Source of the DNA: Podarcis pityusensis
Taxonomy: Eukaryota
Length of the DNA stretch: 64,000 nucleotides
Assembly (NCBI GenBank): GCA_964106645.2
Contig: OZ067044.1
Reading direction: 5' to 3' (one strand)
Positions 4,342 to 39,400 of this stretch are shown here, in pieces (position 1 is the first letter of the stretch; the number at the start of each line of letters is the position of its first letter). The notes beneath the pieces are model-generated. The model was not told the DNA's origin, searched no databases, and saw only the letters and a program-made list of their open reading frames with translations. The position numbers and the translations under genes are program-made.

Positions 4342-4735
4342 CAAGCCTAATTATATATATATTTTTAATAAGCATGTTTCAATCGCTGCTCTTTGGAAAA
4401 GTTATTTTACATATCAAATAAAATGAGCTATTGTAGAGGTGATCTGTCCACTCTGTAAAAGTGTGTGATTTCCTATATATAGATCAACTGCTATTTACAC
4501 AGCTTGACAAGAAACCCCAAAAGACAACAGCAGCACCTAAACACCCACCCCAAAGCCTTTACTTGTAATGAACTTTTTTGCACTTCTTCACACAGTATGT
4601 AGTTAAACTGTGGGATCCAGTGCCAGAAAACATTTAAAAGATGGTTAAAAAGAGATAAAACACATGTAACATACACGTCGTTTTAAAAGTAATATTCACT
4701 GTCATGAATAGTAAATAAATGAATATATTTGTTGA

Positions 4736-9382
<4,647 letters not shown>

Positions 9383-10736
9383 TAATAGAGTGAATTATAT
9401 ACTCTCAGCAATCTCTTAAACTGTTCAGTTCATTCCAGTGTAAGCTAATGGAACCAGATTCCTATTCTGCATAGTAGGAGCATGCGGCAACCATGTTACT
9501 TTTTGCTTGATAGTTTTGCATGCTCCTTGCCACCCCCTGTCCCCATCCCATAACTGTCAGAGGCTTAGTGCTGTCCAGCTGGCCATAGATAAGACTCCGG
9601 GCTCCCAGCCAGTTCCAAACAATTGATTTATTTGACAAGTTCAAACGTACATCTCCAGCGTTTCCATTAGCCTCCTTCCCCTTGTGCGCAGTTGCTCCCT
9701 CTAATCTTACTTCCTCCTTTTCCGCACCCAGCATGCAAGTCTGCGAAAACTCCTCCCCTTACTTCCTCTGTGTACAGCATGACTTGTCCCAGGCTCATCC
9801 TCCTCCCCCTCTACGTCAGACTAGACGACAAGCTGCTGATAATCTCTTTAGGCTCTCTATAACTGCTGGTTTCTGTCCTTTCATCTTTTCCCATTTGCCT
9901 CTCCCTGACAATAACAATAGTATATTTTACTTTCTGCATAAACTAAATGAGAAAGGGGATGTTTTTGCGTAAGGAGAATAGCTATGCTGCTGTTTTCTAC
10001 TTTCTTATTAAATGTAAAACAAATATGTATTTTTGATGCAACCAGCTGATGCCAGAAGGGCCAAGAAAATACTCATGAGTAGCATAGTTTGCTTTCCACA
10101 TTTTTTACAAGATAACTTTACATTGCCCTTTTGGCTCCAGTGATTATGCAACTGGAAAGTTGCTAGGAGGACTTGTTAGCCAGATTTTTGGAGAAGACAG
10201 ATAATGCTGTCAAAAGGTGAAGGAGTTTGGAAGCTTCCACTTCTGTTTAAACAATACATCTGAACCTTAAACTGCAGATTAACTGTTATTATGAACTACG
10301 GTTTACTCAAGTAAGCCAGCTTCTTAAACTACAATTTGAAATTGGCTTTGTTTTTGTAAACAGTTGTTAAAACTAACTGCAGTTTGTCTGGTTCAGAAGT
10401 CAATCTGAAACAGAAACAAGCTTTCAAATTCCTTGCAAGCTGTGCCAGGGAAAAATAGACAAGGCTCACACAGACTTGTCCTGTGCCATGATTTAGTGTT
10501 ACATATGAATGCAGTCCATTGACTTGCATCTGCTTGATGTGCTGCTTTCATATATATAAAGATTCTTCAAACAATGTTTCATGTTAACACAGTAAACTTC
10601 ATATATTTAATTCCGTATTTGTGATACAAATATGTGCATTCGGTGACATTTTAAGCACCATAATTTTTTCCTCCAGTTGACTATGTTATGGCTCTTGCTT
10701 ATGTGTACAGTATTGTATATAAATGATATTGCATGA

Positions 10737-18320: not shown

Positions 18321-20404
18321 CCTCCCTTTCCCTCATAGCTTGGGAGGGAAGGAGTTTAGTGCAGTTGTGCCACCATGCTTAAAATGCACATGTGGAGCTT
18401 GGAATCCACAAGAAAATAATAGACACTGCCCCGCCTCTCCTCTTCAGTCACACAAGCAAGTAAAGCAGCATTTGATAAGAAGAGGTTGGGTGGACAGGGC
18501 TTTAGTAGCAGCTGGTGAAAGCTATAGTAGAAGCTGCCCAGTCTCAATAATGGAGAAAACCTAGCCAGCAGACTAAAAGGATACTGCTACAAAGGACTGT
18601 GTGGCAAACTTGTTCAAAGCTAGCAAACCAGGTATTCTTTTTCTTTTTATCTCTCCCCATAGACACGTGTGTGTTTAATACCTTTACGGCAGGCAGAATT
18701 CAGCAGCTTCACTTGCTGAATTTTTGCCTCCCATGTTAAAAGAAAGGCCTAGCGCCCACTTATTTATCATTGTACAAATTACTCACTGGTGTTAGATGCA
18801 CTGAGCTCTAATAGAGACAATTATTTTACATCTAGGGAGCAAATATTGTCGGCCTGTTCCCATTTATTTTTATTTTGTCTTTAGGATATGGTTTTATTTA
18901 CACATATATGCAACCTGAGCATTGGATGGGAGGGGGTTGGTCTGTTCCCATTTACGTATATGAAACTTCTCTGTACATACGCTGCATTTTGTATGTGTAA
19001 ATATTAATAGGAATGTGAATTGGATTATCACCATTTCTTGTCATGATTCAACAAATGAAGCTTTCACTTATTTTCATGTTGGAAGAAACATCAGAATTTT
19101 ACAGCTGCTATATACATAGGAAATATACTGTGGTGGGGGAAAATGGTGGTAACCTCATCTTCATTTCAAGTTGTGTTCTAGGGTTCCTTTTCCTTCATAC
19201 TTCTGACACTTTCTTACCTGTCCCAGATGGGATTAAATAATCTACCCACCTCCCAGGGCACCCTCAGTATGACTCATGGGATGCTCTTCCTCTTATTTGC
19301 AGAGGGAAGAATTTCCCCCCTCTTATTTTCCTTTTGTAGTCTTTCTTAAATAGAAAGCCAAAATGTTTTTTCCCAGTGAATCTGTTTGACCCACTAGGAC
19401 TTCAATCCTGTGAACATTTGGGAGTAAGCCCCACTGAAAATGAGGAAATACTACAAAGGTTGATTGCCTCTTAACATGCTTTAACCAGCCACAAATGAAG
19501 TAAGATAATGTGTGAGAAAGCATTGGTTTTGCTCCCTCTTTAAAAGTATGGTTATGGATAAAATGGGACTTCTTGGAGTTTAATGGTGTTGCAGGGGCTA
19601 ATCACCTGGGTCTTAGTCTTGCAGTTGGCACTTCATGCTGTGCCGTATTATCTCTAAAAATCCACACACTTGATGTCGCTTAATGTTACAGGCCACTTAT
19701 TGACCATGTTTTAACCACTCTCTTGTAGAAAACCCATGAGAAGGCGGCAAATTTCTGTTCCACTCATCCATTATATGCTTATGAGTGAAGTGGGAATTTT
19801 AGTCCATGCTAACACTGATGGATAATCCCCATTAATAGCTTTTATGTTAGATAAAAGTTATGGTGGTAAACAATTTCTACCTGTAATTTGTAAATTTAAT
19901 TTGTAATTAATTAATTAATTGTAAATATTGAGGCAGAGATTAAATGACTTTCATATAATCGGATTAACAAAGGTGAGTCCTGAATAAGGATTGCATCTCA
20001 ATGGTAATTTTGGAACCACTGTCCTATACAGAAAGGATTGAAATACTTATGACTATGAATGAACCATGACCAAATCCATTAAATGGCAGGTCTCTTCAAC
20101 TTTCATACCCTTTCTTTCAACCTTTATTCTCTTCATTAATTTATAAAACTGGCTGGGAGCTGTACTGTACAACAGGAGACTGGTTGAATGTTGTATGAGC
20201 TTACTAATTATAAGAAACAGGGAGGGAGGCTGTTCCTGAAATAACTAGATCCAGATTACAGTGTAGCTGAAAGGAACAGAGATCTCACCATACTGAATTA
20301 CATAAGAAACCTAGTTACAGATAGGTAGCCGTGTTGGTCTGCCATAGTCAAAATAAAAAAAATCCTTCCAGTAGCACCTTTAAGACCAACTAAGTTAGTT
20401 CTTG

Positions 20405-20442
20405 GTATGAGCTTTCGTGTGCAAGCACACTTCTTCAGATAC
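20405..20442 (-). ncRNA. Minimal hammerhead ribozyme (PLE type), intact core
   Basis: Minus strand reads GUAU-CUGAAGA-A-GUGUGC-UU-GCACAC-GAAA-GC-UC-AUAC: CUGANGA and GAAA cores, 6-bp stem II, palindromic AGCU stem III, CUC cleavage triplet, GUAU/AUAC stem I. Confidence 0.8.
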
Positions 20443-20480
20443 GTATCTGAAGAAGTGTGCTTGCACACGAAAGCCCATAC
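20443..20480 (+). ncRNA. Minimal hammerhead ribozyme copy with mutated cleavage triplet (probably inactive)
   Basis: Same as the minus copy except GAAAGCCC instead of GAAAGCUC (position 20475), losing the conserved U of the NUH triplet. Confidence 0.7.
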
Positions 20481-21049
20481 CAAGAACTAACTTAGTTGGT
20501 CTTAAAGGTGCTACTGGAAGGATTTTTTTTATAAGAAACCTATGTAGCTTAACATGTTCTTGTCCATTTGCTAAGATCGGAAATGAGAGGTGTGTTATTG
20601 TGTACCTGTTGGCCAAAGAGACTACTGTCTTTTCTGTGCACAATTACTTAGGAATAAGGCACATTGACAGAACTGGAAATTACTTTTGAGCAAGCATGAA
20701 TAGGACTGCACTGCACATAAACTTCTTATTGTGGACCAGCCTATTATTTACATTCATGCCCAGATGGATCCTGGAGAAGTTATTTCTCCTTGAAATGCTA
20801 GTAAATGCCCAAATGAGTTGTGAGCTATAGTCTTTCTTAGACATATTACATTTTTTCACTTACTTTGTTCATCTCTACCCTGCTTGTCCTTGTTCTTTTG
20901 TTTAAGGTGAATTCTGGAATACCTTACATTTGGAATCTCTAGTTACTGGTGCCCATTGAAATTTGAAGGGTGGAAGGGAGACCAACAATAGGTAGAGCCA
21001 AACCCAGTGACAGGCAGAGCAAATTCTAATTTTGTTAAAGCGAATTATA

Positions 21050-21800
21050 CCACAGAGGAACGAACACCGCTTGGGCGTAAATTTAACGTTAATTCGGACG
21101 CCTATGCAATGCGCATGCGTGCTCCTGGCTCAAACCATCCCTTCGCTTCCACCCCCACTCATAAGACTACATCTCCCAAAATGCATCAAACAAAAAAAAG
21201 GGCAGGCGGGACTTTCTACCCGTTATATAAAAATAGGGAGAACAAGTGCGCAGGCGCAGGCTCCCTTCTCCTCTCCTCTTGGGTAGCTCGCTCCCTCAGC
21301 TACTACGACAGCCCCTCCCTGGGCGTCATGCGCGTGCGCTGCCTAATTCCGGCCTCTGCCCTCGATAGCCAAAGGGCTGCAAGAAACAGGCCGGAGAAGC
21401 GGGGGGGAGGAGGAGAGAAGGGCGCTCGCGCATGCGCCTCCAAACTGCCTCCTTCTGTTCCCTATACCCGACCTTGTAAGCGGGCGGCGAGGGGATGGGG
21501 CGCGGAGCGGGGCCCGGATGAGGCCGAAGAGGAGCCAAGCTCAGCACAGCCGTCCTGCCAGCGACGGGCTCCCCACCCACCCGCTCAGGTCAGTGCTGGG
21601 GCCATGCTCATGCGCGTGAGGGCTCCCCACCCGACCCGGGTTCTCCCTCACATCAGCTCCGTTGCCTCCGAGAAGGGGGTGAGGGAGGGAAATGTGGCCG
21701 AGCCTGTGGGAAAAGGGCATTAACTGAAGCGCTCTCTGCGGCGCGCATGCGCTAGTATCCCTGTGCAGCGCCCCCTAGCGCCTGGGGGCGCCTTGTGACT
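21050..21800 (+). promoter_or_regulatory. RALBP1: CpG-island promoter of RALBP1 with NRF1-type, ZNF143/THAP11-type and CTCF-type motifs
   Basis: The only non-transposon CpG-dense block seen in the window; GCGCATGCGC-like motifs at 21110, 21247, 21329, 21427, 21742; ACTACATCTCCCAAAATGCAT at 21166-21186; GCAGCGCCCCCTAGCG at 21765-21780. Confidence 0.85.
21400..21588 (+). other. RALBP1: Probable non-coding exon 1 of RALBP1 (start approximate)
   Basis: Strong donor CAG|GTCAGT at 21588/21589 inside the CpG island; exon 2 has an acceptor at 27269 upstream of the ATG, so a non-coding first exon is required. Confidence 0.6.
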
Positions 21801-22477
21801 GAGGCCCGGTTGGTTCTCAGGCTGCCACTCCCTTTTTCTCCTCAGGATTGCTGAATGGGGTGTTGGCATATTGGCACACCCTGCGGGTGGGATGAAAACG
21901 ATGCAAGCAACGTCGACATTATCAACCGCTTTGAGGTGTTTTTTTTGGGGGGGGGGTTGCACTCAAGCGGTGTATAAATTTTATGAAATAAATAAATACT
22001 CTGCAACAAGTGGTTCAGGTTGCAATCCTACGCACACTTAACATGTTAAAAAGGCCCTTTGCATGTAGTGGGGTTAACCTCTGAGTAAATGTGTGTTGTT
22101 CGAGTATCTTCCACTCACCATCATTCCCCCCACCCACTTTTGCCTGCTTAATGCTCCCAGTGACTACTTATGTGGACTCTCTTAATGCATAAACATGCCC
22201 CTTTGAGACTATGGCAGGATGGTTAAAAGATAACTAATTAATGATGTTAAACTGCAACCAGCCAGCCCCCATTCACAAGCATCCTGTTTGTAGGATCAAA
22301 TAAACTTATGAAATGGGAACACAGTGGTAACTATTGTGATTCAGGATGCATTTATGTAATGGTTTTTCTTTTTGGGGGAGTAACTGTTGCAGTCTTCCAT
22401 GTACCCTTTCTTAGTTACTTAGATGTGCAAAAATACAGGGATTTTTTTTTTTTTAAAGGATTACAGAAGCTCATATA

Positions 22478-22993
22478 CCGTATTTTTTGCCCCATAGGAC
22501 GCACTTTTTCCCCTCCAAAAATGAAGGGGAAATCTGGGTGCGTCCTATGGAGCGAATGCAGGCTTTCGCTGAAGCTTGGAGAGCGAGAGGGTTGGTGCGC
22601 ACTGACCCCTCTCGCTCTCCAGGCTTCGGGAAGACATCTGCAGCCTGCTTCCCGGAGCGCCGGGCGCACTGAAAGCAGAGCACCCGGCGCTTCGGGAACA
22701 CATCCGCAGCCTGAAGCAGAGCGCCCCTCGCGCCAGGCAGACATCCGCAGTGTGGGGAGCAGCCTGCCGCCCGGCGTGCGGCGTGCCCTGAAGCAGAGCG
22801 CCCCTCGCGCCGGGCAGACATCGGGCAGCCCCACAAGCTCGGGGGACAGCGGGGAGGCGTAGCGCCGCCATCCCACTGTTCCCCGACTTGGTTTTGGGGG
22901 AGAAATAAAGGAAAACATTTTTTCCTTTATTTCCCCCCCAAAAAACTAGGTGCGTCCTATGGGACGGAGCGTCCTATGGGACGAAAAATACGG
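22478..22993. mobile_element. Tc2-like MITE, same termini as 11022-11565 but different GC-rich core
   Basis: TA|CCGTATTTTTTGC ... CGAAAAATACGG|TA; repeated subterminal GCGTCCTATGG motifs. Confidence 0.85.
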
Positions 22994-25900
22994 TATGTGT
23001 CAGCAGCCAAAAAGAAATCAAACAGAATTGGGGATAAAAAGCAGCCCGTGGCACCCCACAGTGCAACTGCCAAAGGGGAAAACCTAATCCCCTCATGCTA
23101 TTTACTAAATCCAGCCCCTTAGGTATGAGCGGAATCGCTTCAACACAGTGCCACCAACTCACAACACAGAAGTGGCCATAGTCAAAGGTATCAGAAGCTG
23201 TTGAGGGACCAAGCAAGAGCAACAAGGTCTGTCCTGCTTCTGAAGGACATCATGTATCAGGACACCCAAAGATGATTTTGTTCCCAAACAAGGCTCAAAC
23301 CCAGACTGAAATGGGTCAATATCATCAGCTTCCTCTAAGAGTGTCTGCCAGCCCCCTCTCAAGCACCTTACCCCCAAAAGGGGATATTTGTGATAGGGTG
23401 GTAGTTGTCAAACACCTCAAGATCCAAGGAAGGCTTCTTTAGGAGCACTACTGCCTCCTTTGTGTACGTTTATAACATACTTTAGTTTCTGTATTTAATG
23501 AAAACCATAACATACCAGGATTAGTTGAAGAAACAAATACTGTGATATATTTTAAAAGATTTCTAGATTTGTGTCTATGCTCGTAATTGTATTGGTCACA
23601 CAGAATGCTTGTTATTAGCAACAGAGCAAATACTAAAGATACCAGTGCACCTTGTAAAAGAAAAAAAGTTTAAAAATACCTCTCTCTGAAATCCTGGAGA
23701 GCTACTGTCAGACAGGACTGTCCTCATTCAGGCACAGTTGGTCTGGCTTTGGAAAAGGCAGCTGCTTATATCCTTCAGCACCACAAAGAACTCTCTCTAA
23801 GAAAGGTTTCTTTTTGTATGTGTCCTGTTGGGTGCATTTGTTAACACAAGGAATTGTTTTAGCCACACAGAATGATTTCTGTATAGGTGGCTACAGTTTC
23901 CCTAAAGGTTTTGGAAGTGCTTCAAACTGTAGCTGGTTATATATTTACCCAAGCTACATGGTTGCAGCTGCTCCATGGCTGGATCTTCCACAGCTCTGGT
24001 AATATTTGAGTAACAGAGGAAGATCAGTGCAGCAGCAGGAGTGTTTAAATCAAGCTGTTATATGTAAATACAGCTTGCATAGTGCAAGTAACCCCATCCT
24101 GAAGATTGTTAAAGCACACTAAAGCAATTTCAAGTTTGCCTTCCTGGTTCACAGTGAAAGCTTTTCTTCCTCCAATCGGTGACTGATTTGGAAGTCCCAT
24201 GTTCTGTTTTGTATCCCATATCTACATTGCTTGCGCTGTGCTAGTATACCAACCACTGAGATCAAAACAGATTTCATGCCCTGACTTTCAAGGAAAAGAG
24301 ATGGGGAAGTATCATTTTTAAATTTTTCTTGTGATCAGAGAACCTTTGCTAAGCAGCAGGCAAAAACTACCATTCTTCCCACCTCCTCTCTTTCCTTTAG
24401 GAAAGGTTGGCAGGAAGCTTCTCTGGCTGCTTCTCCATAATAGGGCTCATCTGATGAGCTTTTGTGACCATAATTTTTGACTTTGCAGGCAAGGCCAGCC
24501 AAAAAATATGGACCTCTGCACAGATGTCACAAAGTAAAATGCTTCCTCAAAGCTGTGGAAAGCAGTTTTCTCCCCATTCATATTTTTTGGTGTAACCCAG
24601 CCCATTTTAGCCACAATTCAGTTTTAGATCCCACTGACTTCAGTGGGAGCTACGTATGTGCTTAGTTCTCTCTCTGAATTTAATTGAATTGTTCATCCAG
24701 ATAAGATTTTTTTCTTTTTTATTGAGGCAAACATTCTGCCAGATTTGAGCATGTGTGGACACATGATATTAGCTGTGGCTCAGCAAATGAGGAATCTGGA
24801 ATAACAAAATGTTTCCCAGAACATTTCAACACCAGAGAGAGCGGAACTGTTCAGTGTTTGTTATTTGTTGTACCATGACTTTGAAATGAACTTATGATAA
24901 AGGTTATACTGTGTCTGAATGTTTGCTAATAAACTGCTTAAAAAGCAAATTGTGTATGGACTTGAAGAGTTGCAGCTGTGCTGTAAACAAAATAGGAACC
25001 TGACATGGGTCAAATCAGGTTTGTTTATGATACATAGATTCTTTGTATTCCTTCCCTTTGACCCACTTACAGTTAAAGGCACCTTATGGACACTTTTCTA
25101 GCTTTTAGTCATTCAAGGTCAGTGGGGCTACTCAGGGCAAAGTGGTTTAAGTTTTCACTCATGAAGCTCAATTCAGTGCATATTTAGTGAGGGCTAAGTC
25201 TGTTCAGTTATGCTAGGATTGCAGGCTCAGCTGAGAAAACTTCAATTCTGAAATGCAAGGCTATGTTTTCAGAATGAGTTATCTTCTGATTAGGTAGCAG
25301 TAGCTGTTTGATTCAGGGCCAAAACTGCATGAGAGACATGGCATCTATGGTGGGAGCTCCCATTTTTATTTTTTATTTTGAAGTAATTTTAAGGGGATTC
25401 AATTTTTGTTGGAACAGTTGTGTGGAAGGAGAGAGAGATAAACTCCATGACTTCATACTCCTTATCTAAATCTCCAAGGTGTTGTTTCACTGGTGGTTTG
25501 GCACTTGCTCTTGGCTGTGCAACTTAATTGGAGGACCTTCGTAAGACTTTCATAAGCAATAGTAGGCAAGAGAGTGATTCACATGGGAGTTACGAGTTGT
25601 CCTGATAATTTTTATTCTATGATTCTGGTTTTGAAATAACAACATGTTCTACCAGTGTATAGTCTACACATGATAAACTTTAGCGCTGAGAGAGAACAGA
25701 GTGTTCTTTACATAAATGCAAGTCAGTCTGACAGCAAGGATAGCTAAGGCAAGAGATTCAAACAAGGCTTATAGTTTTGCCCTAAGACAATCCCCAGGTT
25801 CTGTGATGGAAATAAACAATGTGCATGCAGGAAATTGGCACAGACATATTTTAAACTAGTGTACTCTTATACTTCTTGTTTTAGGTTTACCTCCTGTTCC

Positions 25901-30500: not shown

Positions 30501-32421
30501 AAGTAGGGTCCACGGCTTGGCTTTTGAAAAACAGGGGGTCCACAGTACTTAGCTAATTGGGAACCAATGCTCTAGCAGGTTCTCCATCAAATTTAGTTCA
30601 GGTTTTTTTTAGCCATTTCCTCCTCTGTCTTAGCATATGTGCTGCAATAAGTGATGGGTGTGATTTAGATATTTATTTTCTTGTTCTTCCCTACAGGGTA
30701 GGCAGGGCTAGTTGCAGAAGAGGTGTAGCTTATTGGACTCCTGTGCATTTATTTCAGAGGCAGCAAAGTAAAGCACCTGATAATTTGCAGCAAAAGCTTT
30801 GTTTGTCTTATGGCTGTGGAATTGAACTCTCTTGTGCAGTTTATATAATCCAAATGGGCACATGTAGTTAGAGATTTGTCAGGATGATTGGGACAACTTT
30901 GCCCATGGAACTGAAAAGTAAGTTATTTCTTTTTAGAGGTTGTACATTAATTTTTTACATTGTAGAATATCTGGTTTGCCTAGAATATCTGGTCTAACCT
31001 TTTTATTCCAAGCAGTTAACTTAGTGGTTTGTGCAATGCAATCCACTTCTCATTGAAGTCAGTAGCAAAGCTCTCACTCATTTTAATGCAGCAGGATTGT
31101 ATTATTTGTATTTTTTGCAGGTTGATTTTCAGATGTGCTTGTAAAGATGTTGAACTGATGCCATGACAGTGTGTTATATTCACTGCAAAAATACATATAT
31201 TTTTGACATTCTAATTTTAATAATAATGATTCTTATAATTAATGTGTATGATGAAAATAACAAATGTACAAGTTCAAGAAGTTCTGACTAATTTTCTATA
31301 CTTTTTGCAAGTATGAACAACTGTGTTATAATGCTTCTTAAATAACAAATGAAAGTTCAAACCATTTATTAGTGGCAAATGTGTGTTGTTTGAATATTGT
31401 TTCTGATTGCAATGGTTATTAAATAATTTTATTCACTTTCATACAACTCTTCTTCCAAGGAACCCAGGGCAGGACAGTGTACATGCCCCACCTACACACA
31501 GACACACACTAATCCTTATAATAACTTTGTTGAGGTAGGTTAGGCTAAGATAGGCTTACCAGCCAAATGGCATCCATTAAATTTCCAAAGCTTAGCATGG
31601 ATTTGAATCTGAGTCTTCCTGCTCATATTCTGCTTCTTATCCGTGAGACCCTCCTGGTGGTAATAGAGACTAGCAATAGCTCTTCTACTCATCTTGTTTA
31701 ACAAACTCTTTTGTCACCATAATGAGCTTTATATATGCACTCATTCATAAATTATCACATATCGCTGTTTGCCTGTTGGCCATCTTAGAAAATGGTAACC
31801 AAACTGGAAAATTCATACAACAGGATGCAAGTGTCTACCCAAGTAAAATCACATAGGCCTGAATCATATACAAACTTCAAGATTCTCTGCACATTCTGTT
31901 TTTTTAGAAGAGTCTACAGCAGATCCTGGAATATTGCTAAAGGTTTAAGATAAGCAGATATGCGCCATTCATATCACTTTACAGCATCAGTTCTGTATTG
32001 ATTTTGATGTTACATTTTACTTTAGGAGGAAACGATGAAAAACATTAAGGTGCCAGTACTAAGTTTACTTACCAGGGAATAACTCCACTGAACACAATGG
32101 GATATTCAAGCCTTGGCTTAGGCTTTCATTGCAAGTTGGAGTTAAACTTCAAACTGTACATTTTTGCATATTGTTGTCAGCAGGTAATCAAGTGATTCTG
32201 CTTGTGTATGAAGCTTTCATACCAGAGTAATATTTTTAAAAATTCATGTACATTATTCAGGGGAAGAAAATACATCAGAATTGTCTCCAAGTCCTGCATA
32301 ATTCTGCAAATATGTGTATGTAGCACATTATTGCTGAGCATTTTTCTGCCTTTTGGCTTTTCTAGGTAGATTATGCGTTTGATATTTTCCCTCCTTCATG
32401 TCTTCCTTTTTCTCTTAACAG

Positions 32422-32880
32422 CGGAAGGCTATGCAGCCTTCCAGGAAGACAGCTCTGGGGATGAAGCTGAAAGCCCCTCCAAGTTAAAGCGCTCCAAAGG
32501 GATCCACGTTTTCAAGAAGCCAAGTTTCTCCAAAAAGAAGGAAAAAGATTTTAAGATAAAAGAAAAACCCAAAGATGAAAAACATAAAGAGGACAAGCAC
32601 AAGGAGGAAAAACATAAAGAGAAGAAATCTAAAGACTTGACAGCAGCGGATGTTGTGAAACAGTGGAAAGAGAAGAAGAAGAAGAAGAAACCAGCTCAAG
32701 AGGCAGAGATACCGCAGGTGGATATTCCCAGGCCTCGCCCTGTGTTTGGTATCCCTTTGGCAGATGCAGCAGAAAGGACCATGTTGTATGATGGCATCCG
32801 CCTGCCAGCAGTTTTCCGGGAATGTATAGATTACGTAGAGAAATATGGCATGAAATGCGAAGGCATCTACAGAGTTTCAG
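32422..32880 (+). CDS. RALBP1: RALBP1 coding exon (459 bp): EGYAAFQEDSSGDEAE...start of RhoGAP domain (EGIYRVS arginine finger)
   Basis: taacag acceptor, GTATAG donor; in frame. Confidence 0.97.
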
Positions 32881-35398
32881 GTATAGTGGCCCAACTAAAG
32901 GTAGCTTTCGTCTGCTTTGCCTCATGTCTTTTGACCCAAAGGGCATGGTGGGGCTCTCCACCTTCACATTGCCCAAAACTTCATGTGACTTTGTAAATGC
33001 CTGCAGCTTCCTAAAACCAAATATGTTTAGCTGCTGTTGAGTTTAGGCTAGCTCTAAATTTAAGGCTGGAAGGATTGCTGATAAGCAGGTATAATTGAAA
33101 AATGATTTACTCTGCTTATATATATTAAAGTTCAATAGGTTAAAGACACAATTCTATATACATCTACCATTTGTGTTCAGTGGTGCTTGCTCCTGGGTTA
33201 ATGTGCATTTTTTTTATCGAGTCCTTAAAATTTATAAATTGCTTGATTGTGGGGGTTTTTTAAACAAGTTACATATATTACCACTGCAATTAAGACTGCA
33301 AATTTTATGCCCAGTTTTCTAGAAGTAAGCCCTTTGAATTTGACTGGATTTCCTTTTCAATGAACACATAAGATTATGCCGTAAGTTAGCAAACCTAGTC
33401 TTTTGCGTTTGAGGGCACAGTGTCTTATCAGATCCATTAAAGTCATGCTTCCCTAGAGTGGCACTGATTTCCAAGCGGTTTCCTCAGCCATCTGCCACAA
33501 CCTGCTTGCTGAGTAGAGCAACTGAAAAAAACAACATGGTTCAGTCTTTGTGATAGAAAGAGAAAATTGGCACATGGCACTTCCCAACTGCATTCCTCAC
33601 AACGCTTGCTCTGGAGTAGTGACTTCAGTATGTATAATGGTATAGAGTGGTGTAAGTAGTTTGAGGACTGTGAGAATATAACCTAATCAGAGATGTTAAG
33701 AACCTTGCAGTTGTTTGCTATATATTTTTAATTATGTTGTGTAAAAGATTCAGTGCTAGCAAGTAAAATAGTGATTTGTCAAGTGGCATATGGTGGGGAG
33801 AGAACATATTCTTCAGCTGTTTTTCCCTCCTACACTTTCATTTTGACTTTCTTCCAAATGGAATTTATACACAAAGTCCTCATTAGCTGGTATCTTGAAA
33901 AAACAGGGGAAATGTTGCAATAGCAGTTGAGGATTTAGCTTGGATTTGAAGAAAACACCCCGGTGGTAATGCCAAGATAATTAGCAGCCACGGTAGTTGT
34001 GTAACCCTTGATCCACATAAAAGTAACAATGATTCGAGTCATTTATTTAATTATACAGCTGTATTTTGAATTGTGAATGCCACCTGTGAGAGGCATCATG
34101 TCCGTGATCGAAATGCAATGCACGAGCTGTTTTGACAGGAACTGAAATGCAAATTCCAAGGCGGAATTTAAAGACAAAACTGCACAGGAAGTAAATATTT
34201 TGAAGAGATATTTAGTGCAAACATTGCACATTAGTGATACATAAATATGAAAGCATAGCCACACTTTTATTGACACTATGTCACTATTTCAATCAGAAGT
34301 ATAATTTTCTGATCTTGGAGGTTCATATCCTTTACTATGCCAGGCCGTGCTACAGTATGACCATGACAGTGTAAAGTGTCCTTCTCTGGGTAGTAGATAT
34401 GGATACTGCTTGGAATTTAAGCTTGAAAGGGAATTTGTGCAAGCATTGGAAAGTGTTTGGGCAAGTCTGAACAATGCAGAGAAGTAAAGTATTCTGATTA
34501 TAACTGACTTGTAAACAAGTCCATAAAAGTTGGTATCCTGCAACCTTGCTTTATTTTATTTTTACTAACCTGCCTCCTAGCAGACTAGTGGTGTGGATGG
34601 GTGTTTAAGCCTTCTGCATTTCTGTGCCTGTCCTTCCTCTGTGGCTAGCATGGAAACCGAACACGCAGGCAGAGGACAGCAGAGCAGTTTGTCTCTCCTC
34701 CACCGGTGTGCTCATTCATCAGCATAGAATTCCATGCACTTGCCTGCATGGAATTTTAGTGGCCTTTGATGACCAGGTGTGTTCTTAGAAATAAGGATTG
34801 AAAGTGGATAGTGTACAACACATCAGACACATCAGAACATGGGTGTGGTTTATTATTATTAAAAAAATTAAAGAGATGGTTGAAATTCCGAATCAAAAAG
34901 TCACCATCCAACCACTATCTCTGCTGTTTCTCCTCTACCTGCTTTTGCTGTAAATTGGAGACCCTGGATGCACCCACAAAATACACAAAACTATGGTTTA
35001 ACACCCAAGGATGAGCCTGAGTGACTTGTCAGGCTTGCATGCATCGTTCTCTTCCGTCATGGTCTTGAGGTACATTTTGGCAGAGTTTAGTTTCACAGAA
35101 TCCTGGATCGTTACTACATTTGAAACATGGATTCTAATTTAAAACAAACTGGCAAGTTTCATAACAAGCTGGTGTCAGACTGTGGGTTTGTTCTGCTTGG
35201 ACTTGTTCTGGCTCATCCATGCCGTGCTAAACCATGCAGACGCAGCCTAGGGCTCCTTCCTGCCCTCTTCCATTGCACACACCCTTATCTGCAGTCAGCA
35301 TGCTGTAGTGTTATTTCTTGAGTTAAGAGCCCAGGGTGGTATTCAACAAGGTTTTCCTGAGAGCAGACCTATTGAAATTAATGAGCACAACTAAGGTA

Positions 35399-35806: not shown

Positions 35807-35976
35807 TAGGTTCATTAATTTCAGTGGGTCTGCTATGAATAAAACTTACTTGAGTACTTCCCCCAGTGTTTTGTGACTTTGCAAAATGAAGATAGTGCTT
35901 TACATGTGTGATTGCTCTATTTTTGTTTGTTTTTGGAATTATTTTGTGAAATCATTTTTTTTCTCTCTTTTTTTAG

Positions 35977-36326
35977 GAATTAAATCAAAGGTGGATGAGC
36001 TAAAAGCAGCATATGACCGAGAAGAATCCCCCAACCTGGAGGAGTATGAGCCTAACACTGTAGCCAGCTTGTTGAAACAGTATCTGCGTGAACTTCCTGA
36101 GAACTTGCTTACCAAAGAGCTCATGCCTCGCTTTGAAGATGCTTGTGGGAAGAGCCTGGAGGTTGAGAAATTGCAGGAGTGCCAGCGTCTCCTGAAAGAA
36201 CTACCAGAGTGTAACTATCTCCTAATTTCTTGGCTGATTGTGCACATGGACCATGTAATTGCAAAGGAACTAGAAACAAAAATGAATATACAGAACATTT
36301 CCATAGTACTCAGCCCAACTGTTCAG
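35977..36326 (+). CDS. RALBP1: RALBP1 coding exon (350 bp), RhoGAP core: IKSKVDELKAAYDREE...NISIVLSPTVQ
   Basis: ttttag acceptor, GTATGC donor; ASLLKQYLRELPE RhoGAP motif. Confidence 0.97.
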
Positions 36327-36357
36327 GTATGCATAATAGGCTCTCTATTTCCCTACT

Positions 36358-36403
36358 TCTCTCTCTCTCTCTCTCTCTCTATGTATATATATATATATAT
36401 ATA
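36358..36403. repeat. Compound (CT)n(TA)n microsatellite just downstream of a RALBP1 donor
   Basis: Direct reading. Confidence 0.9.
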
Positions 36404-39400
36404 TCAGTGGTTTTCAGACTTATTTCTCTGGGCCAATTTCAGAATAATAATTTGCTCTTGCCACACTGAATTTTTAAGTGATAAGAAATACATTGGGACA
36501 CAAAAAGAAGCAACAACTAGCAGGGCTTCATTTTGAAAAGATCTATCCATATTCTGCAAATAAATATATATATTCTGATGCTATACTATACTATACTACA
36601 GTGGAATGTTTAGATGTTTATTTGATTGTCTTTGAATCTTCCTGCCACACTTGCTATCCTTACCTGCCACACCAACATGGCATGCCACACTCTTTGAGAA
36701 CCACTGTGCTCTCTATATCCCTGCCTACATCCATATGTTGCTGAAGGTAAGCAGAGTTGGGATCTGCGTAGGACACATATAGAAGCTGTTTATAGAGGAA
36801 GGAGGGGATGTAAATGTAATTAATTGTGCACCAAGCTATCATTTATAGTTGGTTGGGACCAACAAATCAAACTTAATGACCTTGTGATAGTACCCAGTCA
36901 CCCTCTTACATAATCCAGACCAGTGTGCAACTATGGGTACCTGCAGAGCCCATAGTTCCAGATGGTGTTCAGGCAAGGGAGCCTTGTTAGACACTCCTAA
37001 ACTGGGACTGTGTTAGTTCTCTTTGTGTCCTCCTCCCCAGCCTCCCAAGGTCTAGAACAGAATGGATATTTGTTTTGGTTGAGGGTTTATTTGACATACC
37101 CTACAGTTATACATAATTTACCATTCTTCCTGCAATGTTTTAATGGCCCTCATTCATTGCTTCTGTTGTCTCAATTAGCATTGCAGGGAAAGAAAATTAT
37201 GCAAACGAAACCCAGCTTTACCAAGCAGCAGCAGTTTTTGAGATTTTGAAGCTTAAAACAGCCATCCTTTCTTTGATATATTTAGTAATGTCTTTACAAT
37301 CTTGGATAAGATTGCCGCTGTCTTTGGCATCCCAACTGGTTGGCATTTTTAAGCCTTTGGCCATGCAGGCATGAGAAAGGGTTGCAGAAAATATACTTTC
37401 TAGGTATTAGGTCCCATTGAACATAGTGAACTAACTTTTGAGTACACAAGGGCTACGCTGTTAGTCATATGATAAGTTACATATATCAGTATAAAAGCAC
37501 TAGAACCTGGACTTTTGCTAGGTACTGAGGGCTTAACCACCTGCTACCTTCACATCTCCAAATGTAGATCACATATGTTGATCTCCTTCCAGAATGAGTA
37601 ATCACAGTAATCTCATTTTAATTTTATTATTGAATAATGATGCTGTCAAACCAGTTGTTCAAATGCTAAACAAGATATTCCAGTTGAAACTCCTTTTGTG
37701 CAATGTATCAACTAAAGTCAAGACAAAAATCAAATCATTTGATAGTGTTATACTTTTTGTTGTTTAAATTTATTCCATTATATCTTTGAATTTCAGTTAT
37801 TCCCAGTTGAGAATTGAAGTCTAGGTAATATTTGTTTTTTAATCTCACTGCCATTTTTATGTAATCCAATGAGAGAGTGAAGCTTTTTGGGCATGTGGAT
37901 TAGGTAATGTTCTTTGACGTCTTTGCTTTGCTCCATCTCCCTTCTTAGCAGCCAAAGTAAAATGAAAGCAACATGGTATTACCCTGTTATATCTTGTTAT
38001 ATATGTAGGATTAAGTTCAGTTAAAGTCATATATTCCTAGACTCCAGATTTTTTCTGGAAACTAATGTGACAGCTAGATTCCAAAACAAATCAGTTTTCA
38101 AGGCCATGAACAGTAGTATCTCTTCTCAGTGTATACTTCCTTGTGTTTTTTAAAATGACTGACTGATAAAAAATATTTCATGCTTTGAATATTCTTATTA
38201 TAGGTGGAGAGTTAAACAGGCATTTTTTTTAAATGTTGCAGGTATTCAAAGTACAATGTAAAGACTTCATAGAAAGGATCTCATTATATCAACGCTTTAA
38301 CCCAGCTGGAGATTCTGGAATTGACAGTATAAAATTTTAGCTAATTTTTTGCTTTCTAAGAGTTCTGACATTTTGGGATTGCAAGATATAAAGTTAACAC
38401 TTCGTTTGGGATCCATTTCCCAGTGCTTAGACTAACAAAGAAGGCTATAACAGCACAGGGTCTTTATTAAAAAACCTGCTCTTGCCTAGTCAATTTTATG
38501 AAGTTTGTGGGAACAGACTGGATGGATATCTCTGGTTCTCTGTTATGTAAGAACATCAAACTGGAGCATTAGGATTAGGCCGTCAGAAGTGCATGTTTGA
38601 CATGTCACCTTCATAATCCATTTATATTAAAATGTTGAATAATAGTATTGCTGTTATTTTACACTTCCAAAGCTCCTAAGATTTTCTAAGCCTATATGTG
38701 TATTAAAGATAAGGCAGCCTCTGCCTGCAGACACAACCTCTCATATACATCTCATAAAAGGAATGGGAAAGGGAGAAGTAAGCAAGCATTGGAGCAGCTG
38801 TTCCTTCTCTGATCAATGAATTAATCGTCTGTTTGCCATGGTGTTCTTCCTGGGAGGCAGAGGGTGCAGCCTCTCATTAGTAGAGGCCAGAATCTTCTTC
38901 CCTTTTGTTTTGTAGTACTAGAGCAACTGGTGTTACAATGCAGTTGGTATTGCCTACGTAAATAAGAGAAGTCCAATGGTGCTGTTTTATTGTAAAGCCA
39001 AATCATGGTAAAAAGAACAAAGGAAAGATTGTCAGAAAGGTTTTTGCAGCTTCCCTTTGTGGATTCTTCTACTGTTCTAGAACTACCTGTCATTTAGTCC
39101 ATCCTTGGCCCCTTCTCAGAACCCCTCCCATATCAGGCTAGTGGAGATGAACTCAAATATTGCTTTCAGATCATGTTGCACTGGAAGAAAATGTACTGCT
39201 ATTGCAGAGCAGAACACTCCACATTACTCTTAAAGGCAGGTCAAGGCAAAAGTTTAAAGGAAAAAGTAAAATAAAACTGTAAGATCATTTGCTCAGCCTT
39301 TCCTGGATAAAAATTTCTCCTTGCCTGAAGGTGGCAAGTGGTCAGACCCCAACGTTTAAACAAAAAACACATTTACCAGATTCCTTTGGAGCCTTTACAG

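What the first reader, a model, noticed from the sequence alone, without database searches (positions are those of the whole stretch)
20302..20542. Head-to-head double hammerhead ribozyme palindrome upstream of the RALBP1 promoter; its only mismatch hits the cleavage triplet
Seen: a spacer-less palindrome of ~90-bp arms centred at 20442/20443, bounded by a 12-bp TSD (ATAAGAAACCTA). Each arm holds CTGAAGA-A-GTGTGC-TT-GCACAC-GAAA-GC(T/C)C-ATAC closed by GTAT. The arms differ at one position (20410/20475), which changes CUC to CCC in the plus copy and leaves the minus copy intact. Established: Penelope-like retroelements carry minimal hammerheads with a palindromic stem III that cleave as dimers, and often leave inverted pLTR insertions. 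Inference: the intact copy lies on the strand of upstream-antisense transcription from the RALBP1 CpG promoter ~0.6 kb away, and the dead copy on the ANKRD12 read-through/RALBP1 strand. It could act as a strand-specific self-cleavage or termination element. Alternatively the 90-bp hairpin sequesters both cores and gives an ADAR/Dicer substrate or a DNA cruciform. The single substitution may be chance.
Basis: partly seen in the sequence, partly recalled or inferred. Interest (0 to 1): 0.85.

Follow-up and report, generated by a model that had tools for sequence, protein, structure and literature searches.

The report
Young palindromic Penelope-like retroelement insertion
The palindrome is a very recent 229-bp insertion of an abundant Penelope-like retroelement: two truncated copies joined head to head, each with the element's usual minimal hammerhead motif. 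This is a normal footprint of that transposon class and not a regulatory device of the RALBP1 promoter.

Summary
There is a spacerless inverted repeat at 20353-20442 / 20443-20532 with one mismatch (20410/20475), flanked by a 12-bp direct repeat.

A contig from a related species (organism D) runs from 20301 straight to 20531 with one copy of the 12-mer. So 20302-20530 is a true 229-bp insertion with a target-site duplication. In organism A, contig geometry suggests that filled and empty alleles coexist.

The inserted sequence belongs to a very abundant repeat. Summed depth is 10^5-10^6 inside the insertion against about 30 in the flanks.

Each arm fits the published minimal, dimer-type hammerhead of metazoan Penelope-like elements (PMC4209133). 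No Rfam hammerhead model matches.

The left arm runs 39 nt further than the right. That matches the one-sided 30-40-bp "tail" and the inverted 5'-truncated copies typical of these elements (PMC8557442, PMC11167929).

Local ribozyme function is unlikely:
- Each transcript holds one sense hammerhead, preceded by its own antisense.
- The hairpin is about -165 kcal/mol, and opening it for the hammerhead costs about 55 kcal/mol.
- No RNA reads lie on the flanks (organism D only, which lacks the insertion).

The single mismatch is at chance level. Verdict: an ordinary new member of a known kind, of low to moderate interest.

The parts
20302..20313 (.). Left copy of the 12-bp target-site duplication (ATAAGAAACCTA)
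   Evidence: Direct repeat D1. Organism D's contig has a single copy at the empty site (X7 record 17).
20314..20352 (-). 39-nt 'tail': the 3' extension of the minus-sense element copy, absent from the other arm. It contains an AC-rich stretch (CAGACCAACACGG).
   Evidence: Sequence. Other genomic copies end at 20311-20315 with unrelated flanks (table 7). The depth drop in bin 20301-20341 relative to 20342-20382 fits an optional tail. The literature describes a 30-40-bp tail at one end of PLE insertions (PMC8557442) lying between two reverse-transcription start sites (PMC11167929).
20353..20442 (-). Left palindrome arm, a 5'-truncated element copy that is sense on the minus strand
   Evidence: Inverted repeat I1. 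High-copy repeat (table 2).
20405..20442 (-). Complete minimal type-I hammerhead motif: helix I GUAU/AUAC, C3-A9 CUGAAGA, an extra A, helix II GUGUG/CACAC with loop CUUG, G12-A14 GAA, and A15.1-G-C-U16.1 (palindromic AGCU). C17 is at 20409, so the predicted cut lies between 20409 and 20408.
   Evidence: Descriptor scan, mapping, and comparison with the features listed in PMC4209133. No Rfam hammerhead hit.
20443..20530 (+). Right palindrome arm, a 5'-truncated element copy that is sense on the plus strand and ends at the tail-less terminus
   Evidence: Inverted repeat I1. Its end at 20530-20532 mirrors 20353-20355, where 146 RNA reads from other copies leave the element (table 7).
20443..20480 (+). 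The same hammerhead motif but with C at position 16.1 (20475), so A15.1-U16.1 and the AGCU palindrome are lost
20531..20542 (.). Right copy of the target-site duplication
21200..21900 (+). Context: GC-rich island (65-68% GC), the presumed RALBP1 promoter. No transcription start site was mapped.
35886..36536 (+). Context: open frame holding a RALBP1 RhoGAP-domain exon
   Evidence: Pfam RhoGAP 1.4e-31. Best solved structure is RalA-binding protein 1, 2mbg, E 5.6e-67.

Best explanation
A single, very recent retrotransposition event inserted 229 bp of a highly abundant Penelope-like (PLE-type) retroelement into an AT-rich intergenic site about 0.7 kb upstream of the RALBP1 GC-rich island.

The insert is two 5'-truncated copies of the element's 3' module (hammerhead to reverse-transcription start), joined head to head without a spacer. 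The minus-sense copy starts at the distal start site and so carries the 39-nt tail. The plus-sense copy starts at the proximal site and has no tail.

The likeliest origin is inferred, not shown. Both DNA strands of a 10-12-bp staggered cut primed cDNA synthesis, both cDNAs reached the same 5' point of the template, and one was extended on the other.

The hammerhead motifs are cargo of the element. Where they function at all, they do so in tandem or multimeric element transcripts and with the element's protein. At this locus they are not expected to cleave. Any transcript across it would fold into a 90-bp perfect hairpin, and the DNA is a potentially unstable perfect palindrome.
For: 1. Insertion and duplication. 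X7 (organism D) record 17 aligns 19850-20301 and then directly 20531-20938, with 229 bp missing and one 12-mer.
2. Youth.
- The duplication is 12/12 identical and the arms differ at 1 of 90 positions.
- In both organism A runs the left flank contig ends exactly at 20313. The right contig carries exactly 18 unaligned letters beyond 20531, which equals (k-1 = 30) minus 12. That is the geometry expected if empty and filled alleles branch there (table 8).
- Both arms share two variants that are common in A and under 3% in D (20381/20504 and 20424/20461, table 3).
3. High-copy family. 4479-9622 contigs were laid, with summed depth of 0.3-2.5 million inside 20301-20546 against 27-52 in the flanks.
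4. The palindrome is not a family feature. Other copies continue past 20442 with a shared sequence (329 RNA reads, agreement 0.81, table 7).
5. Hammerhead anatomy. [quoted passage not shown]
6. Published PLE signatures. Inverted 5'-truncated copies and a 30-40-bp tail at only one end are described in PMC8557442. Two start sites and extension of both DNA strands in vitro are described in PMC11167929.
7. Geometry against Anolis Poseidon_Ac. In that element the cut site lies about 55 and about 89 nt from the two start sites. Here the distances are 56 and 95 nt.
8. No local ribozyme capacity.
- The hairpin is -167 / -164 kcal/mol (z = -26).
- Keeping hammerhead helices I and II costs +55 to +58 kcal/mol.
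- The pair probabilities are 0.
- The trans helix III is worth only -3.9 kcal/mol.
Against: - No full-length family copy could be fetched, so the link to a reverse transcriptase / GIY-YIG open reading frame is inferred from architecture and not shown.
- Rfam's hammerhead models give no hit even at E <= 10 on 96 nt. Cleavage competence of this motif type is low in vitro according to the literature.
- The internal structure of the insert (centre of the palindrome, the single mismatch) could not be checked in independent reads, because its words are high-copy.
- Heterozygosity in organism A is deduced from contig ends, not seen directly.
- The RNA run is from organism D, which lacks the insertion, so it says nothing direct about transcription of the filled allele.
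Confidence: 0.85

Rival explanations
1. One reading: the pair is a strand-specific self-cleaving or termination element. The intact minus-strand hammerhead would cut upstream-antisense RNA from the RALBP1 promoter, and the plus-strand copy would have been inactivated.
For: The intact motif is on the minus strand and RALBP1 is on the plus strand. A GC-rich island lies about 0.7 kb away. The mismatch does remove U16.1 in the plus copy.
Against: - This hammerhead type needs two sense copies to build helix III (PMC4209133). Each transcript here has only one, preceded by its antisense, so the hairpin zips up as the sense copy emerges.
- The hammerhead fold costs +55 to +58 kcal/mol.
- The insertion is absent in organism D and probably polymorphic in A, so it has not been selected.
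- The flanks have zero RNA reads in the one RNA run laid, and there is no pile of read ends at the cut site among family reads.
- One mismatch falling among the 12 invariant core positions out of 90 has p of about 0.13. Falling anywhere within the 38-nt motif has p of about 0.42.
- The Anolis PLE hammerhead needs the element's protein, and no cleaved ends were seen in vivo (PMC11167929).
Confidence: 0.03
2. The insert matters as a hairpin rather than as a ribozyme. If transcribed, the 90-bp perfect dsRNA stem would be a Dicer or ADAR substrate, possibly yielding small RNAs against the abundant family. At the DNA level the spacerless palindrome would be a cruciform or fragile site.
For: The RNA hairpin is -167 kcal/mol with z = -26. 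The DNA hairpin is -104 kcal/mol per strand. Generic miRNA-precursor models score 40-66 bits, all below their gathering thresholds, simply because it is a long hairpin. The family has roughly 10^4 copies as potential targets.
Against: There is no evidence of transcription across the site (different species, one library). No small-RNA data were available. The insertion is too young to have been selected. The miRNA hits are below threshold and unspecific.
Confidence: 0.07
3. The family is not the 3' end of an autonomous PLE but a short non-autonomous hammerhead-bearing element (a retrozyme-like or SINE-like monomer) mobilised in trans by PLE machinery.
For: Copy number is extremely high. DNA contigs agree for only about 16 nt upstream of the arm start and then diverge (agreement 0.43-0.53, table 7). 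Animal non-LTR retrozymes are reported to derive from PLE pseudo-LTRs and to occur in reptiles with short consensus lengths (bioRxiv 10.64898/2026.07.22.740005).
Against: Heavy 5' truncation of autonomous PLEs gives the same picture. The RNA reads continue upstream with agreement 0.81. No tandem arrangement is present here. This cannot be decided without full-length copies. It would change the label but not the conclusion about this locus.
Confidence: 0.25
4. The palindrome, or its single mismatch, is an assembly or polishing artefact inside a real repeat insertion.
For: Perfect palindromes and high-copy repeats are hard to assemble (noted for PLEs in PMC8557442). No independent contig spanning the centre or position 20475 could be singled out.
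Against: - The flanks are collinear with organism D's uninterrupted contig, so this is not a fold-back chimera.
- Flank contigs of two organism A runs from different studies break exactly at the insert boundaries.
- The arms are unequal, and each ends at a terminus also seen in other copies.
- At 229 bp the insert is far shorter than any long read.
- Another spacerless palindrome of the same family, centred in the AGCT, exists elsewhere in the genome (table 7, X1 at 20413).
Confidence: 0.05

Closest known systems
Minimal (dimer-type) hammerhead motifs of metazoan Penelope-like elements (Cervera & de la Pena 2014, PMC4209133; Lunse et al. 2017, cited through PMC6765202)
   Same: Type-I topology, a CUGANGA and GAAA core, an unpaired nucleotide between A9 and G10.1, a G10.1-C11.1 pair, a long helix II (5-6 bp) and a short helix I (4 bp). 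There is no helix III hairpin, only a palindromic A-GC-U. The motif is very abundant and mostly occurs as solitary truncated copies. Pairs on opposite strands are also reported there.
   Different: The two motifs here abut head to head with no spacer (the paper mentions opposite-strand pairs 100-700 bp apart). One copy has C at position 16.1. Activity was not tested.
Poseidon_Ac (PAc) of Anolis carolinensis: two internal reverse-transcription start sites and the 'tail' (Frangieh et al. 2024, PMC11167929)
   Same: The order hammerhead, then about 55 nt, then start site 1, then a 34-39-nt tail, then start site 2. There is an AC-rich segment in the tail and an AT-rich target. Both DNA strands can be extended, which would give inverted copies.
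   Different: There is no recognisable sequence identity to the PAc consensus (read by eye). In PAc the open reading frame starts at helix II, and here there is no ATG at that point. The tail is 39-41 nt against about 34.
Canonical PLE insertion architecture (Craig et al. 2021, PMC8557442)
   Same: High 5' truncation, an inverted 5'-truncated copy forming inverted repeats, and a 30-40-bp tail at only one end.
   Different: Here the whole insertion is only the two short inverted ends. There is no open reading frame and no pseudo-LTR tandem.
Animal non-LTR retrozymes (PMC7229834; bioRxiv 10.64898/2026.07.22.740005)
   Same: Short, abundant, hammerhead-bearing, PLE-related sequences in non-avian reptiles, amphibians and fishes.
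   Different: Retrozymes are tandem direct repeats with type-I hammerheads that have a helix III and give rise to circular RNAs. Here there is an inverted pair, a minimal helix III, and no tandem.
Rfam hammerhead families (types I, II, III, HH9, HH10)
   Same: The same catalytic boxes.
   Different: No match at E <= 10 and none at gathering score. The models expect an intramolecular helix III.

Membership tests
Hammerhead ribozyme (catalytic motif) | Core boxes C3-U4-G5-A6-N7-G8-A9 and G12-A13-A14 | tested here: met
   CUGAAGA and GAA are present in both arms.
Hammerhead ribozyme (catalytic motif) | A15.1-U16.1 pair followed by H17 at the cleavage site | tested here: inconclusive
   The minus copy has A...U then C17, but the pair can form only between two molecules. 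The plus copy has C at 16.1, so the feature is not met there.
Hammerhead ribozyme (catalytic motif) | Three helices around the core (I, II, III) | tested here: inconclusive
   Helix I (4 bp) and helix II (5 bp, G10.1-C11.1) are present. There is no intramolecular helix III, and the trans AGCU/AGCU duplex is worth only -3.9 kcal/mol.
Hammerhead ribozyme (catalytic motif) | Match to a curated covariance model | tested here: not met
   No Rfam hammerhead family matches at E <= 10 on 2 kb or on 96 nt, and none at gathering score.
Hammerhead ribozyme (catalytic motif) | Self-cleavage | not testable with these tools
   This needs in vitro transcription. Among RNA reads from family copies, no excess of ends was seen at the predicted site (table 6).
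Min-hammerhead of metazoan PLEs (PMC4209133) | Extra nucleotide between 9 and 10.1, G10.1-C11.1, palindromic 15.2-16.2, short helix I and long helix II | tested here: met
   All are present in the minus copy. The plus copy fails only the palindrome (criteria read).
Min-hammerhead of metazoan PLEs (PMC4209133) | Occurs as a large genomic family | tested here: met
   Thousands of contigs and 10^5-10^6 summed depth in two species. No variant reaches 10% in the core positions (tables 1-3).
Penelope-like element insertion | Family encodes a telomerase-like reverse transcriptase plus a GIY-YIG endonuclease | not testable with these tools
   There is no other copy in the window and none in the metagenome, prokaryote-genome or viral collections.
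Penelope-like element insertion | Optional 30-40-bp tail, often at one end only | tested here: met
   A 39-nt extension is present on one arm only. Termini of other copies lie at 20311-20315 and near 20355.
Penelope-like element insertion | Inverted 5'-truncated copy adjacent to a sense copy | tested here: met
   Head-to-head arms. Other copies extend past the centre, so both arms here are truncated (table 7).
Penelope-like element insertion | Bona fide transposition: target-site duplication and an empty site | tested here: met
   Empty site in organism D (X7 record 17) and the 12-bp duplication.

The most novel reading that the evidence does not exclude
The locus is a newborn, still-segregating hairpin-RNA gene. 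When read by divergent transcription from the RALBP1 GC-rich promoter, the spacerless 90-bp perfect inverted repeat of an active retroelement family with roughly 10^4 copies would yield double-stranded RNA and small RNAs that act in trans on that family. The same locus is also a clean in vivo footprint of two-strand priming at the two alternative start sites of PLE reverse transcription.
Probability: 0.05. Interest if true: 0.55.

Novelty: new member of a known kind. Interest (0 to 1): 0.27.

Why it matters
- It shows that what looked like a designed 'double ribozyme' next to a promoter is the standard scar of Penelope-like retrotransposition.
- The family is, or very recently was, active in this vertebrate lineage. 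The insertion is absent from a sister species and probably heterozygous in two sequenced individuals.
- The locus is a compact natural example of three PLE features that are still poorly explained mechanistically: the inverted copy, the one-sided tail and the two start sites. It could serve as a test case for the two-strand priming seen in vitro.
- It gives no support for a host function of the hammerhead motifs.

Tried and rejected
- Rfam at permissive thresholds on 2 kb and on 96 nt, and at gathering score on the whole window. There was no hammerhead hit, only sub-threshold generic miRNA or snoRNA hairpin matches, which reflect the long stem.
- Looking for other copies. There were none in the window and none in metagenome, prokaryotic-genome or viral contigs with two different patterns. 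No alignment, covariation test or link to an open reading frame was therefore possible.
- Full-text search for the motif strings found no papers. The supplements of PMC4209133 are not held, and PMC5785218 is not held.
- This scan's earlier notes held nothing near the site and nothing under the words tried.
- Identity of the 1526-aa open frame at 4805-9385 as ANKRD12 was not established. It has no Pfam family, and the atlas best score of 0.77 is uninformative.
- Folding of single arms gave z-scores near 0, so thermodynamics alone does not single out the hammerhead.
- Rejected: a fold-back assembly chimera, because the flanks are collinear with the empty site in organism D.
- Rejected: the palindrome as a family feature, because other copies run through the centre.
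- Rejected: the mismatch as a meaningful event, because it is at chance level and the insertion is too young for selection.
Full report
**1. What is there**

The sequence and the repeat finder confirm three things:
- a spacerless inverted repeat, 20353-20442 / 20443-20532, with 90-nt arms and 99% complementarity;
- a single mismatch at 20410/20475;
- a 12-bp direct repeat, ATAAGAAACCTA, at 20302-20313 and 20531-20542.

Read outward from the centre, each arm begins GTAT-CTGAAGA-A-GTGTG-CTTG-CACAC-GAA-AGC(T/C)-C-ATAC.

The two arms are not equal copies. Read on the minus strand, the left copy continues for 39 more nucleotides (20352 down to 20314) before reaching the direct repeat. The right copy stops at its T-run. 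The last two palindromic bases (AT) overlap the direct repeat, so the duplication is 10-12 bp.

**2. It is a true and very young insertion**

I laid the contigs of three DNA runs and the reads of one RNA run on 19850-21050.

- *Empty site in organism D.* In organism D (run X7), one 1857-nt contig at normal depth (51.6) aligns 19850-20301 and then continues directly at 20531-20938. This is the empty site. It lacks exactly 229 bp and has one copy of the 12-mer. That proves an insertion with a target-site duplication, and it excludes a fold-back assembly chimera, because the two flanks are collinear elsewhere.
- *Probable heterozygosity in organism A.* In organism A (X1 and X2, from different studies), the left flank contig ends exactly at 20313. 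The right flank contig aligns from 20531 and carries exactly 18 further unaligned letters.
  - With 31-letter words, neighbouring contigs overlap by 30 letters, and 30 minus the 12-bp duplication is 18.
  - This is the geometry expected if the right contig follows the empty allele and the left contig stops at a branch between the empty and filled alleles.
  - A homozygous filled site should let both contigs run about 30 letters into the element.
  - A homozygous empty site should give one contig, as in organism D.
  - I therefore infer, without seeing it directly, that both individuals are heterozygous.
- *Shared lineage-specific variants.* Both arms carry two variants (20381/20504 and 20424/20461) that make up a third to a half of the family in A but under 3% in D (table 3). 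The source subfamily therefore expanded in A's lineage.

**3. It belongs to a very abundant repeat**

- Inside 20301-20546 the summed contig depth is 0.3-2.5 million, against 27-52 in the flanks. Between 4479 and 9622 contigs were laid per run. The tool warns that this is not a copy number, so I read it only as 'of the order of 10^4 copies'.
- Other copies leave the alignment at 20311-20315 with unrelated sequences (agreement 0.41-0.46), so 20314 is a family terminus.
- 146 RNA reads leave at 20355, which mirrors the end of the right arm. The depth drop across the tail fits a tail that only part of the copies carry.
- Copies also continue past 20442 with a shared sequence (329 RNA reads, agreement 0.81). 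So the palindrome is not a family feature, and both arms here are 5'-truncated at the same base.

**4. The hammerhead motif**

- No Rfam hammerhead model matches, even at E <= 10 on a 96-nt query. Nothing in the window reaches any gathering score. The sub-threshold miRNA-precursor hits only reflect the long stem.
- The motif nevertheless has the features that Cervera and de la Pena list as emerging, beyond their search descriptor, in the minimal hammerheads of metazoan PLEs (PMC4209133). These are:
  - a nucleotide between A9 and G10.1 (here an A);
  - a G10.1-C11.1 pair;
  - a palindromic 15.2-16.2 (here A-GC-U);
  - a short helix I (4 bp) and a longer helix II (5-6 bp).
- A neutral descriptor of my own is met once in the window, by the minus copy, and never in 300 random 64-kb sequences.
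- Among the thousands of family contigs, no variant reaches 10% in the core. The only common variant within the motif is in loop 2 (table 3).
- That paper also reports such motifs in turtles and snakes, mostly as solitary truncated copies and sometimes as pairs on opposite strands.

**5. The tail and the inverted arrangement**

- Craig et al. (PMC8557442) describe PLE insertions as heavily 5'-truncated, often with an inverted 5'-truncated copy, and with a 30-40-bp tail often at only one end.
- Frangieh et al. (PMC11167929) show for the Anolis element Poseidon_Ac that reverse transcription starts at two internal sites, that the tail is the sequence between them, that the start lies in an AC-rich stem-loop, and that the protein extends both DNA strands.
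- In Poseidon_Ac the hammerhead cut site is about 55 and about 89 nt from the two start sites. Here the distances are 56 and 95 nt, and the tail holds an AC-rich stretch.
- By eye there is no sequence similarity to the Poseidon_Ac consensus, so this is a different family with the same layout.

**6. How the palindrome most likely arose (inference)**

- A staggered cut 10-12 bp apart gave two 3' ends.
- The plus-strand end primed a cDNA from the distal start site (129 nt, with tail). The minus-strand end primed one from the proximal start site (about 90 nt).
- Both cDNAs reached the same 5' point, and one strand was completed by copying the other. That gives a spacerless joint.
- The laid contigs hint that such joints recur in the family. 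Several contigs join variable positions of an antisense copy to exactly 20443. One contig shows another spacerless palindrome centred in the AGCT (tables 5 and 7). These are short matches and I did not follow them up.

**7. Function at this locus**

- A head-to-head pair puts one sense hammerhead in each transcript, not two. The dimer that this ribozyme type needs cannot form within one RNA.
- In either direction the antisense copy is transcribed first, so the stem can zip up as the sense copy emerges.
- The 241-nt transcripts fold at -167 kcal/mol (minus) and -164 kcal/mol (plus), with z = -26.
- Keeping hammerhead helices I and II costs +55 to +58 kcal/mol, and their pair probabilities are 0. 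The trans helix III is worth only -3.9 kcal/mol.
- The one RNA run available is from organism D, with about 12% of the run read. It has no read on the unique flanks and no pile of ends at the predicted cut site among family reads. This is weak evidence, because D lacks the insertion.
- Published work finds low in vitro activity for these motifs (PMC4209133). For the Anolis element it finds dependence on the element's protein and no cleaved ends in vivo (PMC11167929).
- An insertion this young cannot have been shaped by selection.

**8. The mismatch**

- One difference in 90 pairs falls among the 12 invariant core positions with p of about 0.13, and within the 38-nt motif with p of about 0.42. 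The narrow 'cleavage triplet' framing (3 of 90) is post hoc.
- Given the insertion's youth, the difference is as likely to date from reverse transcription, or to be a polishing error, as from later mutation.
- Which letter is commoner in the family could not be read. The aligner sorts contigs to whichever arm they fit best.

**9. Context**

- RhoGAP-domain frames at 32373-32996 and 35886-36536 on the plus strand match RalA-binding protein 1 (2mbg, E 5.6e-67). RALBP1 is therefore confirmed.
- A GC-rich island lies at about 21200-21900.

**10. Verdict**

- This is a new member of a known kind: an ordinary, recent, probably polymorphic PLE-type insertion.
- Its modest interest lies in documenting current activity of the family, and in being a compact natural example of the inverted-copy and one-sided-tail signature.

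Noticed in passing
window 20443 (joints from 20332, 20392, 20396, 20402 and 20406 to 20443) and 20413: In other genomic copies of the family, contigs join variable positions of an antisense copy to exactly the first base of the sense arm (GTAT), sometimes with 1-8 filler letters. One contig shows another spacerless palindrome centred in the AGCT of helix III. This suggests a recurrent 5' end at the hammerhead's first base and recurrent palindromic joints. The matches are short (18-28 nt).
   Followed up: no
window 20976-20999: GGGAGACCAACA followed by ATAGGTAG resembles the AC-rich core of the element's tail, with the next block inverted (repeat finder I3). Contig depth there is about twice that of the flanks. 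It may be an old, degraded fragment of a related element.
   Followed up: no
window 20314-20442, minus strand: One reading frame of the 129-nt sense copy is open throughout and has an ATG inside the tail (ATGGCAGACC...). This recalls Poseidon_Ac, where the open reading frame starts in the hammerhead and tail region. It is not significant on its own (about a 40% chance for 42 codons across three frames).
   Followed up: partly
window 20333-20340 and 20383-20390, minus strand: An 8-bp complementarity (GUUGGUCU / AGACCAAC) would close a stem-loop that holds the U-run and the proximal terminus in its loop and the AC-rich tail segment in its 3' half. It is analogous to the AC-rich stem-loop at the start sites of the Anolis element. 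The overall fold has a z-score of about 0.
   Followed up: partly
window 21100-21760: The GC-rich island carries at least five GCGCATGCGC-like palindromes (near 21110, 21330, 21430, 21610 and 21745). From memory these look like NRF1-type promoter motifs. A second GC-rich block lies at 22400-23000.
   Followed up: no
window 4805-9385, plus strand: A 1526-aa uninterrupted open frame has no Pfam family, and its atlas score (0.77) is uninformative.
   Followed up: partly
window 20929-21050: In organism D's run the contig over this stretch has half the depth (25.8 against 51.6) and carries G>A at 20978 and C>T at 21003, so that individual is heterozygous there. Fixed differences between D and the window in the 1.2 kb laid number about seven, roughly 0.5-1% divergence.
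   Followed up: no
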